Below, piece by piece: positions 41,539-44,147 of a stretch of DNA of 64,000 bases. The translations under genes and the position numbers were made by a program. The notes under the pieces were generated by a model, which worked only from the letters and a program-made list of their open reading frames with translations, was not told the origin of the DNA and made no database searches. Position 1 is the first letter of the stretch. Every line of letters begins with the position of its first letter. The stretch lies in the sequence record PP793740.1. One strand, given 5' to 3'.

Positions 41539-42033
41539 ATGTCAAATAAAGCTAAAGAACCAACTCTAACTAAAGAACAGGAAAAGACTCTACGTCTATT
41601 TGAACGTGCAGTTGGAGCATCAGCTGCCGCAGCTGATCATATTCTTAACCGTGATGGTTGGGATGTTGTCAATGTACTAGCAGGTTCCGTAGGTAAACGT
41701 ATTCTACAAACTGAAGTATTCATTAATCCAGTTATCAATAAGATCAATGAAATCATTCCGACGTTATCTGATCCTACTGGATTCCAAAAGAACCTACAAA
41801 CAGTTATTGCTGACCTTAATCGACTAACTAAAATTATCAGTGTCCTATATGCACAACATCAAGGTAAGGCTGGTCCAGCAAATAATGAAGATGAACTAAA
41901 ACTCATCAGTGAACTTGTTACTAAATACACTGGTATTGAAGGTGCTATTGAACGCGGTATTGATGGTGTAATCCTAGCGATGATCGGCACTCTTCGAGAA
42001 GCTGGTTGGGACGAAAAACTAATTCAACAATAA
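41539..42033 (+). CDS. Hypothetical helical protein (164 aa)
   Basis: GGAG RBS; first gene of a + strand operon. Confidence 0.75.
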   Translation: MSNKAKEPTLTKEQEKTLRLFERAVGASAAAADHILNRDGWDVVNVLAGSVGKRILQTEVFINPVINKINEIIPTLSDPTGFQKNLQTVIADLNRLTKIISVLYAQHQGKAGPANNEDELKLISELVTKYTGIEGAIERGIDGVILAMIGTLREAGWDEKLIQQ

Positions 42034-42044
42034 TGGAGTTTTAA

Positions 42045-43646
42045 ATGGCTACTGCTGACTTCGATAATGAGTACGATGATACTCCAGAAGAGAATTTACT
42101 AGATCAAATTGATGAGATCAATGCGCAACACGATCCTGACTCTAGTATTGAAAATAATGACGAGGTGGAAACTCCACCTTTCGTTCCTGATCAAAAAGAA
42201 ATTAAACTACGTATTCCACGTAATGCTAAAACTGGAAATATCCGGGATGCTTCTGAACCGGCTATTAAAGATAGTGCTAGCATTCTTACTTTACTACGTG
42301 AGAATCCCCAGACTGTTTATAATTTCCTGGATCACAATAAAGAACTATTTAAAGCATTTGCTGATAATAAAGTAGATGACACTAGTGACGGTGTAAAGTG
42401 GACAGCTGCTATTCTGGAAGGCTTAGCTCACTCTATTGTTGAAGATGCACCAATCGGTGCAACTGCCCGAGAAGGTTCTGAATGGTCTAGTGAAATTCCT
42501 TATGGTGAAAAGATCATTCGACCTGGCCGACCTGTATTTAATACCAATGGTCGTAAAATGACCGATGATGAAACTCTAGTTTTCCTAACACGTAAAGCTA
42601 ACATCGGTACGCCATATGATACTTTCCTACCTCATTCAGGTATTTGGGTAAAACTACGTGCACCTACTGGTACTGAAGTAGCTGCCCTACAAGCACGTCT
42701 AGCACAATTAAAGATCCGGCTAGGCGCTGAATCAAAAGGTATGCTGTTCTCAAACATGGCAGCTGTGTTACTTAACATGGTTAGTAGTTTAGCACTTGCA
42801 TGTGTTATTCAATCCAACTATAAGTTCAACACCCCAACTGATCTAGAGCATGTTATCTCAGTAGCTGATGAGCCGTTCTTGCATCACGCACTAGCGGCGA
42901 CTATGTATCCAGATGGATTTAATTATAGTTATCCATGCATTGCAGATGCCAATACATGTAACCATATTGAAACAGCGAAACTTAATATGTCAACGCTTGT
43001 TCAATATGATCTACTGGCATTCTCAGAAGAACAAAAGAAATATATTGCACGTAAGTTTAATGCATGTACTGAATCTGATCTTAAGACTTATAAAGAAGGA
43101 TTCCGTATTGAAACTCAAGTAACTGAAATGTTTGGTGACGTTGGTGTTGTTCTTGAGATGTGTACAATTGCTGATCGCCGAGAGTCTGGTGATAGTTGGA
43201 TTAACTCAATTATCGATATGACTCAAGGTAGTTTTAATGAACCAGTCGATGGTCCGCAACGTTCTCAGTATATTGCACGTTTACAAAAGATCTCTATTGC
43301 CCGTCAGTTCTCACATTTTGTTAAAGAAATTAAAGTACGTGAAGATGACGATGGTGAAAGTTCTGAAGACAATATTCGTACTGCAACCACTAATCGTGAA
43401 ACTATTGAAAAGTTCTTAACTAATATTCTATCCACACCGGAATATAATGACCGCTTTATTAATGCGGTGAGTAACTTCATTGATTCACAACTAATTGGAA
43501 TGATTGCAATTACAAGTTGGAATTGTCCAGTATGTGAGTCACCTGCTGCTACTAAATTTAAAGAACGTTTCCCACACTTAATCCCTATTGACATGCTGTC
43601 AACTTTTTTTACTTTGGCGGCCTCGAAGTCAAACCGGATGGTGTAG
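42045..43646 (+). CDS. Putative baseplate-hub/tail assembly chaperone, T4 gp26-like C-terminus (probably phiKZ gp77)
   Basis: YPC....C.H and WNCPVCE Zn-type motifs; ends I.ML.TFF at a slippery site. Confidence 0.6.
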   Translation: MATADFDNEYDDTPEENLLDQIDEINAQHDPDSSIENNDEVETPPFVPDQKEIKLRIPRNAKTGNIRDASEPAIKDSASILTLLRENPQTVYNFLDHNKELFKAFADNKVDDTSDGVKWTAAILEGLAHSIVEDAPIGATAREGSEWSSEIPYGEKIIRPGRPVFNTNGRKMTDDETLVFLTRKANIGTPYDTFLPHSGIWVKLRAPTGTEVAALQARLAQLKIRLGAESKGMLFSNMAAVLLNMVSSLALACVIQSNYKFNTPTDLEHVISVADEPFLHHALAATMYPDGFNYSYPCIADANTCNHIETAKLNMSTLVQYDLLAFSEEQKKYIARKFNACTESDLKTYKEGFRIETQVTEMFGDVGVVLEMCTIADRRESGDSWINSIIDMTQGSFNEPVDGPQRSQYIARLQKISIARQFSHFVKEIKVREDDDGESSEDNIRTATTNRETIEKFLTNILSTPEYNDRFINAVSNFIDSQLIGMIAITSWNCPVCESPAATKFKERFPHLIPIDMLSTFFTLAASKSNRMV

Positions 43647-44107
43647 TTAATGATCTGAGATATAGTCGTCTTGAGGCCACTTTCAAGGAAGATAGTGGTC
43701 ACATCCTACATCCAAACTTTGGTTATGATAAGTTAACTGAAGATGATACACACTTAGATAGACTATTATCGACAGTAGGGGCAGTAAGACCGTCTACAGC
43801 AGCACGTTTAACAAGAGAAGCATATCTACTTGATTACGATATCGGTTCACCAGAAAACGGACCCATGTGGTTAAATAAGGTAAATCCTAAAGAGGACTTT
43901 ATCGAAGGTGGGTTGAGAAGGAGACTGACTAGAGATTTCTTCAAGTATAAAGTAGGTAGCTTATCTAATATGTCATTAACTGAATTCTTTGAATTAGCTT
44001 ATTCTGAGGTAGAATACATAATTGAATTATGTAGAAATATTACCCATAATGAAGCTGTTAATAACAATAACCAGTTAAATGAATTAAACAAGCCGTTAAC
44101 TAAATAA
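43604..44107 (+). CDS. -1 frameshift extension frame, T4 gp51/lambda T-like (165 codons; first ATG only at 43865)
   Basis: Frame opens after TGA at 43589; T TTT TTT at 43604-43610; C-terminal SLTEFFEL.YSEVEYIIEL. Confidence 0.7.
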   Translation, partial: FFYFGGLEVKPDGVVNDLRYSRLEATFKEDSGHILHPNFGYDKLTEDDTHLDRLLSTVGAVRPSTAARLTREAYLLDYDIGSPENGPMWLNKVNPKEDFIEGGLRRRLTRDFFKYKVGSLSNMSLTEFFELAYSEVEYIIELCRNITHNEAVNNNNQLNELNKPLTK

Positions 44108-44125: not shown

Positions 44126-44147
44126 CCCCTCTCCACATGGAGAGGGG
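44126..44147. terminator. Bidirectional terminator
   Basis: CCCCTCTCC-ACAT-GGAGAGGGG followed by TTTATGTCG. Confidence 0.75.

What the first reader, a model, noticed from the sequence alone, without database searches (positions are those of the whole stretch)
43589..44107. Candidate programmed -1 frameshift producing a lambda G/GT-style chaperone pair in a jumbo phage
Seen in sequence: the 533-aa gene reads ACT TTT TTT ACT near its end (T TTT TTT at 43604-43610). The -1 frame opens just after a TGA at 43589 and runs 165 codons to 44107. Its first 87 codons contain no ATG, GTG or TTG, yet they read like normal coding sequence (FFYFGGLEVKPDGVVNDLRYSRLE...). A possible stimulatory hairpin (TTTGGC-N9-GTCAAA) starts 3 nt downstream. 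Established: tail assembly chaperones of long-tailed phages are made as G and frameshifted GT, and T4 uses gp26 plus gp51. Inference: the CxxC motifs in the first ORF and the SLTEFFEL.YSEVEYIIEL tail resemble that pair, predicting products of 533 aa and about 687 aa. Standard annotation would call only an 80-aa gene at 43865.
Basis: partly seen in the sequence, partly recalled or inferred. Interest (0 to 1): 0.85.

Follow-up and report, generated by a model that had tools for sequence, protein, structure and literature searches.

The report
Conserved frameshift in phiKZ gene 77
Near the end of phiKZ gene 77, a core jumbo-phage gene of unknown function, ribosomes very probably slip back one base on a run of U's and make a second, about 687-residue protein, and the same hidden signal sits in the related T4-type baseplate-hub assembly gene 26 of many other phages.

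Summary
The window is a phiKZ-type Pseudomonas phage. The 533-aa ORF is PHIKZ077, core gene cg18 of Chimalliviridae, and the 80-aa ORF is PHIKZ076.4.

The programmed -1 frameshift is strongly supported by comparison, though no protein product has been observed.
- In 59 distinct metagenomic relatives and 13 named phages (23-100% identity), a -1-frame ORF of about 150-180 codons crosses the gene-77 stop.
- It reaches back to an in-phase U-rich heptamer at an invariant Phe-Phe. The heptamer is T_TTT_TTY/G in 41 of 59 loci and N_TTT_TTY in the rest.
- The first Phe codon is TTT in 59 of 59, although other Phe-Phe pairs in these genes begin with TTC in 30 of 32.
- The first canonical start drifts from 10 to 138 codons downstream, and the stretch before it evolves as coding sequence.

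No stimulatory hairpin, SD-like element or Rfam family was found.

The lambda G/GT reading holds only as an analogy. The T4 gp26/gp51 idea gains real support. Gene 77 resembles the gp26 family (Foldseek E 4.5e-4; hhalign P 9e-4). Gp26 genes of cyanophage-type T4-like phages carry the same heptamer followed by a -1 "gp51" ORF. T2, which has no such ORF, lacks the heptamer. The papers searched do not describe this.

The parts
42045..43646 (+). Gene 77 (PHIKZ077; Chimalliviridae core gene cg18), 0-frame product of 533 aa. This is the short form, with a gp26-like core at about residues 188-523.
   Evidence: ORF and translation. Identity to PHIKZ077. cg18. PHROG 4585. AF2 model with pLDDT 78 and pTM 0.81. 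Foldseek and hhalign links to the gp26 family.
43604..43610 (+). Slippery heptamer T_TTT_TTT across the invariant Phe521-Phe522 codons. This is the proposed site of tandem tRNA-Phe -1 slippage.
   Evidence: Sequence. Heptamer kept in 59 of 59 distinct relatives as N_TTT_TTY/G, and first Phe codon TTT in 59 of 59. Other Phe-Phe pairs use TTC first in 30 of 32. Present in Goslar, SPN3US, RAY, JM-2012, PS1 and Yong MS32.
43592..43646 (+). Zone where both frames are open. The -1 frame opens after the TGA at 43589, and the 0 frame ends at the TAG at 43644-43646. The zone appears to be dual-coding.
   Evidence: Substitution counts in the overlap show no simple single-frame pattern. In two lineages the -1-frame stop lies directly before the heptamer.
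43610..44107 (+). -1-frame extension of 165 codons plus TAA, read after the shift. Together with the first 522 residues this predicts a long form of about 687 aa.
   Evidence: Translation. tblastn shows conservation from its first residue in phiPA3, PA1C, Psa21, Phabio and Noxifer, and from about residue 10 in 201phi2-1 and Viktualia. All 42 tested relatives match PHROG 12109. The part before the ATG shows third-codon-position excess.
43865..44107 (+). Annotated 80-aa ORF PHIKZ076.4. It is the C-terminal helical part of the extension and may also be made on its own from this ATG.
   Evidence: Only this part of the AF2 model of the extension is confident. It aligns weakly with the small gp51-type ORFs.
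43613..43633 (+). It is not supported as a stimulator.
   Evidence: It forms in a 50-nt fold, but the energy is ordinary (z -1.0, rank 0.15). No comparable structure is conserved in 59 relatives (mean z 0.0). It is absent from the 97-nt MFE, which has z -0.34.
44126..44147 (.). G+C-rich hairpin flanked by A and T runs. This terminator-like site, read on both strands, ends the gene 78 / gene 77 / extension unit 19 nt after the TAA.
   Evidence: and sequence.
41539..42033 (+). Gene 78, the conserved upstream neighbour in the same orientation. Function is unknown.
   Evidence: PHROG 14050. Same gene order in 201phi2-1, phiPA3, Goslar, SPN3US and RAY.

Best explanation
Gene 77 of phiKZ-type phages is decoded in two ways.

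Most ribosomes read the 0 frame and stop at 43646, giving the 533-aa short form. A fraction slip back one nucleotide while the two Phe-tRNAs sit on U_UUU_UUU (43604-43610). They continue in the -1 frame for 165 more codons and end at 44107. This gives a long form of about 687 aa with the same first 522 residues. The comparative signature is shown here. The slippage mechanism is inferred from it.

The first ORF is a much enlarged relative of the T4-type gp26 'baseplate hub assembly' protein. The extension occupies the place that the small gp51-type ORF holds in cyanophage-type T4-like phages. The pair is therefore most likely a non-virion assembly factor for the tail baseplate hub, made in a fixed short-to-long ratio set by frameshift efficiency. 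This is the same logic as lambda G/GT, in an unrelated protein family. The function is inferred at about 0.5-0.6, and the ratio is unknown.

No cis stimulator is visible, so efficiency is probably modest. This too is inference.
For: 1. Every complete relative examined shares the architecture. This covers 59 distinct IMG/VR loci plus phiPA3, 201phi2-1, PA1C, Psa21, Phabio, Noxifer, Viktualia, Goslar, SPN3US, RAY, JM-2012, PS1 and Yong MS32. In each the -1 frame is open across the gene-77 stop for about 150-180 codons, and the +1 frame is short.
2. The heptamer at the invariant Phe-Phe is TTTTTTT in 28 loci, TTTTTTC in 11, TTTTTTG in 2, GTTTTTT in 9, ATTTTTT in 6 and GTTTTTC in 4 (counts as printed; the 11 includes one incomplete locus that the 59-locus set leaves out). 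The first Phe codon is TTT in 59 of 59, even in six genes that use TTT nowhere else. Other Phe-Phe pairs are TTC-first in 30 of 32. The preceding codon ends in T in 36 of 51 four-fold cases, against 18.2 expected.
3. There is no conserved start. The first ATG/GTG/TTG lies 10-138 codons after the heptamer, with a median of 36. The TTG that 201phi2-1 annotators used is TTA in Viktualia.
4. The stretch before the start is coding. Differences by codon position are 6042/4881/9617, the same pattern as after the ATG. Conserved columns lie about 50 codons upstream of phiKZ's ATG. All 42 products tested match one PHROG.
5. The -1 frame never closes between the heptamer and the 0-frame stop. In two lineages its upstream stop abuts the heptamer.
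6. For the family link, Foldseek finds the gp26 family at E 4.5e-4 to 6.5e-3 and TMt 0.5-0.57. The name was tied to Pfam PF12322 through DLP6 gp26. hhalign gives P 9e-4 over 223 columns, and P 8.4e-4 against T2 gp26. The reversed control gives 0.34, and the best of 20 shuffles 0.035.
7. The gp26 genes repeat the pattern. 53 of 54 distinct loci have T_TTT_TTT/C at their C-terminal Phe-Phe. The -1 ORF there runs 57-68 codons and shows a coding signature upstream of its common ATG.
8. T2 is a natural negative control. Its gp26 is followed by gp25, its gp51 is divergent, and its Phe-Phe is encoded TTC TTT.
9. A non-virion role is consistent with the records. No mass-spectrometry note is attached to 201phi2-1 gp136, unlike its neighbours gp138 and gp139. 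The Goslar virion study's text never mentions gp81 or gp82.
Against: - No protein-level or ribosome-profiling evidence was available, so the long form has not been observed.
- 19 of 59 heptamers, and one further locus with Val-Phe, are not canonical X_XXY_YYZ and allow perfect re-pairing only in the A site.
- No downstream structure (mean z 0.0 in 59 loci; z -0.34 in phiKZ), no SD-like element (3 of 59 against 9.2 expected) and no Rfam hit was found.
- In one public RNA-seq table, PHIKZ076.4 has several-fold higher values than PHIKZ077. This could mean a separate 3' transcript and some independent expression of the 80-aa ORF.
- The function rests on remote homology. No Pfam match was found, nor any PDB match by fold or sequence. 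HHpred-type probability is only 23%. The extension-to-gp51 link is not significant.
- Gene 77 lies among RNA polymerase and helicase genes, not among tail genes.
Confidence: 0.8

Rival explanations
1. The downstream ORF is a separate gene. Its translation starts at a non-canonical codon, or by termination-reinitiation at the gene-77 stop. It gives a free protein of about 150 aa and no fusion.
For: The two ORFs overlap in the way coupled genes do, and 201phi2-1 has a TTG at the stop. Databases hold only free-standing calls of 103-133 aa. RNA-seq values are higher over PHIKZ076.4 than over PHIKZ077.
Against: No start position is conserved; it ranges from 10 to 138 codons. The 201phi2-1 TTG is lost in its close relative Viktualia. 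This rival does not explain the synonymous fixation of TTT at the first Phe codon or the T before it. Nor does it explain the always-open -1 frame back to the heptamer, or the loss of the heptamer in T2, where no -1 ORF follows. No SD-like motif is enriched nearby.
Confidence: 0.08
2. The frame change is made at the RNA level. The phage RNA polymerase stutters on the T run and adds one U to part of the transcripts, and these then encode the long form directly.
For: phiKZ has T7, and Goslar, RAY and JM-2012 have T8. Homopolymer runs of this length support transcriptional slippage in other systems (general knowledge).
Against: 19 of 59 loci have only T6 or T5 followed by C, and one has T5 after G. 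These are too short for efficient stuttering, yet they keep the same architecture. What is conserved is the phase of the run relative to the codons, as expected for ribosomal slippage.
Confidence: 0.07
3. Only the annotated genes are real. The 87 codons upstream of the ATG are untranslated spacer or a regulatory RNA, and the open frame is a relic.
For: This is the current public annotation. The linker of about 20-30 residues after the heptamer is poorly conserved.
Against: The probability of an open frame of this length is about 1e-5 in one genome, and it is open in all 70 or so genomes. The region has third-position excess and conserved residues. tblastn identity of 32-40% begins at the first residue after the heptamer. 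There is no Rfam match and no unusual structure.
Confidence: 0.02
4. It is a sequencing or assembly error in a homopolymer, or a recent pseudogene. On this view the true gene is one uninterrupted ORF of about 687 aa.
For: Homopolymer runs are error-prone. BFVD holds homologs of 686-687 aa.
Against: 47 independent phiKZ-type records and about 70 divergent genomes all need the same -1 change at the same place. No uninterrupted ORF was found among 20 database homologs of 485-633 aa. The PHROG profile of the 686-687-aa type is longer at its N-terminal end, not its C-terminal end: phiKZ residues 139-501 match profile positions 291-652 of 693.
Confidence: 0.01

Closest known systems
Lambda gpG/gpGT tail assembly chaperones, and the conserved frameshift of long-tailed phages (P2 E/E' is recalled from general knowledge as a myovirus example)
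   Same: A -1 shift at an in-phase slippery heptamer near the 3' end of a morphogenesis-factor gene. It yields a short form and a C-terminally extended long form with a shared N-terminus. No strong stimulator is needed. The extension ORF lacks its own conserved start and is routinely mis-annotated.
   Different: The protein family is unrelated: no Pfam or fold match, and the best tail-assembly-chaperone hit has E 1.9. The gene is not between the tail tube and tape measure genes. The proteins are far larger, 533 and 687 aa. The presumed client is the baseplate hub rather than the tape measure protein.
T4-type gp26, 'baseplate hub assembly protein' (Pfam PF12322 T4_baseplate)
   Same: The fold and profile similarity covers the whole of gp26. 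Both proteins end a few residues after a conserved Phe-Phe. In cyanophage-type, Aeromonas-65-type and DLP6-type phages, that Phe-Phe carries the same T_TTT_TTY heptamer with a -1 ORF behind it.
   Different: Gene 77 protein is 2.5 times longer. It has an extra N-terminal region of about 190 residues, large insertions and four conserved cysteines. It does not reach the Pfam threshold. In T-even phages gp26 has no heptamer and is followed by gp25.
T4-type gp51, 'baseplate hub assembly catalyst/chaperone'
   Same: The small ORFs annotated gp51 in cyanophage-type phages lie directly after gp26 in the -1 frame, as the extension lies after gene 77. They match the C-terminal 50 residues of T2 gp51 at P 4.6e-5. 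The confident helical C-terminal part of the phiKZ extension aligns with them.
   Different: That last alignment is not significant, because 1 of 20 shuffles scored better. The phiKZ extension is about 100 residues longer. T-even gp51 is a separate, divergently transcribed 249-aa gene with its own start.
E. coli dnaX tau/gamma -1 frameshift (recalled from general knowledge)
   Same: Bacterial ribosomes shift -1 on a homopolymeric heptamer to make two products from one gene in a set ratio.
   Different: As recalled, dnaX uses A_AAA_AAG with an upstream SD-like element and a downstream hairpin, and its shifted product is the shorter one. Here neither stimulator is detectable, and the shifted product is the longer one.

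Membership tests
Programmed -1 ribosomal frameshift site (canonical bacterial/phage type) | In-phase X_XXY_YYZ heptamer inside the zone where both frames are open | tested here: met
   T_TTT_TTT at 43604-43610. The heptamer is canonical in 41 of 59 distinct relatives and in 6 of 6 further named phages, and N_TTT_TTY in the rest.
Programmed -1 ribosomal frameshift site (canonical bacterial/phage type) | Conservation of the site at synonymous positions, and of the shifted ORF as coding sequence without its own start | tested here: met
   TTT at the first Phe codon in 59 of 59, against 2 of 32 at other Phe-Phe pairs. Start positions range from 10 to 138 codons. Third-position excess before the start.
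Programmed -1 ribosomal frameshift site (canonical bacterial/phage type) | Stimulatory element: a downstream hairpin or pseudoknot at 5-9 nt, or an upstream SD-like sequence | tested here: not met
   Mean z 0.0 for the 50 nt downstream in 59 loci. phiKZ 97-nt fold has z -0.34. SD-like motif in 3 of 59 against 9.2 expected. No Rfam hit. Pseudoknots were not searched.
Programmed -1 ribosomal frameshift site (canonical bacterial/phage type) | Detection of the trans-frame protein | not testable with these tools
   No peptide-level or ribosome-profiling data could be read. The proteomics table seen lists PHIKZ077 with 0-2 counts and does not list PHIKZ076.4 in the stored part.
Lambda G/GT-type tail assembly chaperone pair | Gene pair located between the tail tube gene and the tape measure gene | tested here: not met
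   The neighbours are gene 78, virion RNA polymerase and head genes 79 and 80, small ORFs, helicase gene 75 and RNA polymerase gene 74.
Lambda G/GT-type tail assembly chaperone pair | Sequence or fold similarity to known tail assembly chaperones | tested here: not met
   No Pfam family. Nothing in PDB by fold or sequence. The best BFVD tail-assembly-chaperone hit has E 1.9.
Lambda G/GT-type tail assembly chaperone pair | Short and long forms made from one start by a -1 shift near the end of the first ORF | tested here: met
   Comparative evidence as above. The products themselves were not observed.
T4-type gp26 baseplate hub assembly protein (PF12322) | Match to the Pfam model above its gathering score | tested here: not met
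   No PF12322 hit for the window protein or any of 20 homologs, even at E 10. DLP6 gp26 scores 187 bits as a positive control.
T4-type gp26 baseplate hub assembly protein (PF12322) | Remote homology by profile-profile and fold comparison over the whole domain | tested here: inconclusive
   hhalign gives P 9e-4 (probability 23%) over gene-77 residues 188-523 against gp26 residues 8-233, and P 8.4e-4 against T2 gp26. All controls are worse. Foldseek finds five matches at E 4.5e-4 to 6.5e-3 and TMt 0.43-0.57; four are named as hub assembly proteins. The results agree but are individually modest.
T4-type gp26 baseplate hub assembly protein (PF12322) | Required for hub assembly and absent from the finished virion | not testable with these tools
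   Indirect only. The role of T4 gp26 and gp51 is given as hub assembly chaperone in PMC3004832. No mass-spectrometry note on 201phi2-1 gp136. The Goslar virion study's text never mentions gp81 or gp82.
T4-type gp51 hub assembly catalyst | Homology of the -1 extension to gp51-type proteins | tested here: inconclusive
   The alignment of extension products against the small gp51 ORFs gives P 0.0046 over 51 columns, but 1 of 20 column shuffles scored better. Against T2 gp51, P is 0.27. The position after a gp26-like gene in the -1 frame is shared.

The most novel reading that the evidence does not exclude
The -1 frameshift may be an ancient, shared feature of the baseplate-hub assembly module of large contractile-tailed phages. 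On this reading one gene (gp26 type) is read through by slippage into a gp51-type extension. This would hold in all Chimalliviridae (core gene cg18) and in Kyanoviridae-type and several other T4-like phages. T-even phages would be the derived state, in which the long form became a separate gene (gp51) and the heptamer was lost. If so, the never-explained 'catalytic' hub factors gp26 and gp51 are the short and long forms of one chaperone whose ratio is set by recoding.
Probability: 0.45. Interest if true: 0.85.

Novelty: new variant of a known kind. Interest (0 to 1): 0.74.

Why it matters
- It gives a product and a testable role to a core Chimalliviridae gene that is listed only as 'hypothetical protein'.
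- It reveals about 85-165 conserved codons per genome that current annotation truncates, omits or replaces with spurious ORFs in hundreds of phage records, including therapeutic phiKZ-type phages.
- It adds a second, unrelated phage morphogenesis module that uses the G/GT principle of a recoding-fixed ratio between two chaperone forms.
- It links jumbo-phage gene 77 to T4 gp26 and gp51, whose mechanism in hub assembly is still unknown, and suggests they be studied as a pair.
- It provides a natural set of more than 100 diverged U_UUU_UUY sites with no visible stimulator for work on frameshift efficiency.

Tried and rejected
- Pfam, single and over all 20 homologs, gave no family for either part.
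- PHROGs gave only families of unknown function.
- PDB by fold and by profile gave nothing.
- The AF2 model of the extension was poor (pLDDT 62). Its Foldseek search returned only unannotated relatives.
- A protein database search with the extension found only truncated gene calls.
- Single-sequence hhalign against DLP6 gp26 and its neighbours was uninformative, so I built family alignments instead.
- Ten literature searches found no report of the frameshift. The 'gp77' hits in papers refer to other phages' numbering: the Goslar capsid decorator, a phiPA3 RNA polymerase subunit and the PCH45 small terminase.
- The antisense-knockdown study targeted PHIKZ077, but both oligomers were toxic to the host, so it says nothing about function.
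- Sequencing error was considered and rejected.
- BFVD homologs of 686-687 aa looked like possible uninterrupted fusions. The PHROG profile of that type is longer at its N-terminal end.
- I built no joined two-frame sequence. Each frame was translated and searched on its own.
Full report
**1. What the window is**

Megablast of 42045-44107 finds 47 Pseudomonas phiKZ-type genomes at 95-100% identity, with 100% to KTN4. In the phiKZ reference record, the 533-aa ORF at 42045-43646 is PHIKZ077 and the 80-aa ORF at 43865-44107 is PHIKZ076.4. On one side lie gene 78 and the virion RNA polymerase and head genes 79 and 80. On the other side lie four small ORFs, helicase gene 75 and RNA polymerase gene 74. 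Gene 77 is core gene cg18 of the nucleus-forming phage family. It is listed as 'hypothetical protein' and corresponds to Goslar gp081 and RAY gp267 (supplement of PMC10299810).

**2. The observation**

- ACT TTT TTT ACT places T_TTT_TTT at 43604-43610 in the X_XXY_YYZ phase.
- The -1 frame is closed by the TGA at 43589 and then open to the TAA at 44105-44107.
- The 0 frame stops at 43644-43646.
- The first ATG/GTG/TTG in the -1 frame is at 43865, 87 codons after the slip codon.

With the window's base composition, 172 open codons have a probability of about 1e-5, and 87 codons without a canonical start about 0.017. All 47 phiKZ-type records keep both the complete 0-frame protein and the complete -1 piece at 99% identity or more. 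The run length is therefore constant and is not a sequencing error.

**3. Comparative test of the frameshift**

tblastn with the -1 piece alone finds 32-40% identical sequence. It starts at the first residue after the heptamer in phiPA3, PA1C, Psa21, Phabio and Noxifer, and at about residue 10 in 201phi2-1 and Viktualia. In all eight fetched relatives the downstream ORF is in the -1 frame and overlaps the end of the gene-77 homolog. Annotators chose starts at different places, giving products of 106-155 aa. The TTG used in 201phi2-1 is TTA in its relative Viktualia, although the residue is kept.

A scan of IMG/VR with an alignment of gene-77 homologs gave 71 loci at 23-100% identity. In every locus where the gene end is present, the -1 frame is open across the stop, and the +1 frame closes quickly. 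In the loci that extend far enough, the -1 frame runs about 150-180 codons beyond an invariant Phe-Phe.

Findings among the 59 non-duplicate loci:
- The heptamer at that Phe-Phe is TTTTTTT (28), TTTTTTC (11; includes one incomplete locus left out of the 59), TTTTTTG (2), GTTTTTT (9), ATTTTTT (6) or GTTTTTC (4).
- The first Phe codon is TTT in 59 of 59. This includes six genes that otherwise never use TTT for Phe.
- The other Phe-Phe pairs in the same 59 genes are TTC-TTT (15), TTC-TTC (15) and TTT-TTT (2).
- The codon before the site ends in T in 36 of 51 four-fold cases, against 18.2 expected.
- The first canonical start in the -1 frame lies 10-138 codons after the heptamer, with a median of 36.
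- In two lineages the upstream -1-frame stop abuts the heptamer, so the shift cannot occur further upstream there.

One further locus has Val-Phe (C_GTT_TTT) with the same architecture. Goslar, SPN3US, RAY, Halocynthia phage JM-2012, Aeromonas PS1 and Vibrio Yong MS32 all show T_TTT_TTT or T_TTT_TTC followed by a start-less -1 ORF.

**4. The pre-ATG stretch is coding**

The -1 products align across the family at 13-36% identity to phiKZ. An invariant Phe and a nearly invariant Gly lie about 50 codons upstream of phiKZ's ATG. All 42 tested products match PHROG 12109.

| Region in the -1 frame | Differences at codon positions 1 / 2 / 3 |
|---|---|
| Between the 0-frame stop and the phiKZ ATG | 6042 / 4881 / 9617 |
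| After the ATG | 5851 / 4551 / 8768 |
| Overlap zone | 1047 / 695 / 860 |

The first two rows show the same third-position excess. The overlap zone shows no simple single-frame pattern, as expected if both frames are constrained.

**5. Mechanism**

The evidence fits tandem slippage of two Phe-tRNAs on U_UUU_UUY, followed by reading of 165 codons in the -1 frame. The products are 533 aa and about 687 aa (522 plus 165).

No stimulator was found.
- The 50 nt after the heptamer fold no better than control windows of the same genes. Mean z is 0.0 and median rank 0.5 over 59 loci.
- SD-like tetramers upstream are not enriched, at 3 of 59 against 9.2 expected.
- Rfam finds nothing.

Efficiency is therefore unknown and probably modest. 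This is inference, by analogy with G/GT.

Transcriptional slippage is a possible contributor where the run is T7-T8. It cannot be the shared mechanism, because 19 of 59 loci have T6 or T5C.

A terminator-like hairpin at 44126-44147 ends the unit.

**6. What the proteins are**

Sequence libraries give no function.
- Pfam gives nothing.
- PHROGs 4585, 8054 and 12109 are of unknown function.
- PDB gives nothing by profile.

The AF2 model of gene-77 protein is good, with pLDDT 78 and pTM 0.81. It has no PDB neighbour. In BFVD it matches jumbo-phage homologs, one of which is annotated 'baseplate protein'. At E 4.5e-4 to 6.5e-3 and TMt 0.43-0.57 it also matches five proteins of 253-284 aa. Three are named 'Baseplate hub assembly protein, bacteriophage T4-like', one 'Baseplate hub assembly chaperone' and one has no name.

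To test this link I used a comparator whose accession a paper supplied: Stenotrophomonas phage DLP6, KU682439.2 (PMC5349666). Its gp26 is a clear PF12322 T4_baseplate member. Family alignments built from fetched loci gave the following hhalign results.

| Comparison | P | Extent or note |
|---|---|---|
| Gene 77 (60 sequences) vs gp26 (58 sequences) | 9e-4 | probability 23%; 223 columns; gene-77 188-523 to gp26 8-233 |
| Gene 77 vs T2 gp26 | 8.4e-4 | gene-77 201-525 to gp26 14-208 |
| Control: reversed gp26 alignment | 0.34 | |
| Control: best of 20 column shuffles | 0.035 | |

The relation is likely but not proven.

T4 gp26 and gp51 are listed as hub assembly chaperones of unknown mechanism (PMC3004832).

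**7. The same recoding signal in gp26 genes**

In the alignment, the gp26 family ends two to five residues after a conserved Phe-Phe that pairs with the gene-77 slip site.
- In 55 of 56 distinct IMG/VR gp26 loci, the -1 frame is the open one after the stop.
- 53 of 54 distinct loci carry T_TTT_TTT or T_TTT_TTC at that Phe-Phe. The -1 ORF runs 57-68 codons, and the first canonical start lies 0-45 codons in.
- The part upstream of the commonest ATG shows third-position excess (7052/6856/11206) and conserved columns.
- This -1 ORF is what records call gp51, 'baseplate hub assembly catalyst'. It is annotated as 60 aa in DLP6 and 45 aa in Syn33.
- Aeromonas phage 65 has the same arrangement. Klebsiella phage 0507-KN2-1 has a -1 ORF in an unannotated gap, with a non-canonical site.

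T2 differs. Its gp26 is followed by gp25, its gp51 is a divergent 249-aa gene, and its Phe-Phe is encoded TTC TTT. The heptamer is absent exactly where no -1 ORF follows.

The small gp51 ORFs match the last 50 residues of T2 gp51 at P 4.6e-5. The phiKZ-type extension aligns with them at P 0.0046, but one of 20 shuffles scored better, so this link is inconclusive. The AF2 model of the extension is poor except for its helical C-terminal 60 residues. Its fold search returns only unannotated relatives.

**8. Comparison with known systems**

The logic matches lambda G/GT: a morphogenesis factor made as a short form and a -1-extended long form. Membership fails on gene position and on sequence or fold similarity.

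The closest family is T4-type gp26 with gp51. Gene 77 looks like an enlarged, cysteine-bearing relative. C298, C305, C494 and C497 are conserved in 90% or more of homologs.

A non-virion role is consistent with the records but not shown.

**9. Novelty**

Ten full-text searches found no description of a frameshift in gene 77, in cg18, or in gp26/gp51. The library does not cover most subscription journals, so prior description cannot be excluded.

**10. Open points**

- No product has been observed.
- An RNA-seq table shows several-fold higher values for PHIKZ076.4 than for PHIKZ077. This may reflect a stable 3' fragment or a separate transcript. Independent synthesis of the 80-aa C-terminal part alongside the fusion cannot be excluded.
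- Pseudoknots were not searched.

I built no sequence joining the two frames. All searches used each frame separately.

Noticed in passing
L092-L171, L089:7050-8369, L172:1819-2672, L173:1501-2399: In T4-like phages of the cyanophage, DLP6 and Aeromonas-65 types, gp26 (PF12322) ends just after a Phe-Phe encoded T_TTT_TTT/C. The ORF annotated gp51 follows in the -1 frame, mostly without a nearby start. This is an apparent unreported -1 frameshift of its own.
   Followed up: partly
L175:750-2574 (Escherichia phage T2): T2 gp26 encodes its C-terminal Phe-Phe as TTC TTT and is followed by gp25. Its gp51 is a divergent 249-aa gene. The N-terminal part of T2 gp51 weakly resembles the C-terminal part of gene-77 protein (hhalign P 0.0028). 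Its last 50 residues match the small gp51 ORFs (P 4.6e-5).
   Followed up: partly
L011 (Pseudomonas phage RVTF4), downstream ORF: Compared with its Psa21-type relatives, this record needs one additional frame change inside the downstream ORF, so its annotated ORF is in the +1 frame. This is either a sequencing error or a damaged copy.
   Followed up: no
L174:2305-2809 (Klebsiella phage 0507-KN2-1, Ackermannviridae): A 500-nt stretch without annotation follows the gp26-like gene. It holds a 58-codon -1 ORF resembling the small gp51 type. The site is Ile-Phe (G_ATT_TTC), which is not a canonical heptamer.
   Followed up: partly
window 43865-44107 versus 42045-43646 (supplement of PMC12571901): In a public RNA-seq table, PHIKZ076.4 has values several-fold higher than PHIKZ077. 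The units were not checked. Possible causes are a 3' stable fragment or an internal transcript start.
   Followed up: no
L002:4790-5092 (phage ANB1); L085:2532-3080 (RAY gp266): Annotation artefacts caused by the hidden ORF. ANB1 carries two small opposite-strand ORFs inside the extension. RAY gp266 was extended to a start 136 nt inside gp267.
   Followed up: yes
window 42045-43646, residues 298, 305, 494, 497: Four cysteines are conserved in 90% or more of gene-77 homologs. They may form a zinc site that joins distant parts of the chain. The DLP6-type gp26 has no counterpart at the aligned CxxC.
   Followed up: no
L089:7050-7665 (DLP6): The 60-aa 'hub assembly catalyst' ORF overlaps a following 148-aa hypothetical ORF by 14 nt. 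The relation between the two was not examined.
   Followed up: no
P0021: A 96-aa protein 90% identical to the phiKZ extension is filed as a partial Klebsiella pneumoniae protein on a 288-nt contig. It is probably phage DNA in a bacterial assembly.
   Followed up: no
window 2951, 3387, 12026, 13402, 56597: These are the other T runs of 7-9 bases on the + strand of the window. I did not check whether any lies in a coding frame.
   Followed up: no
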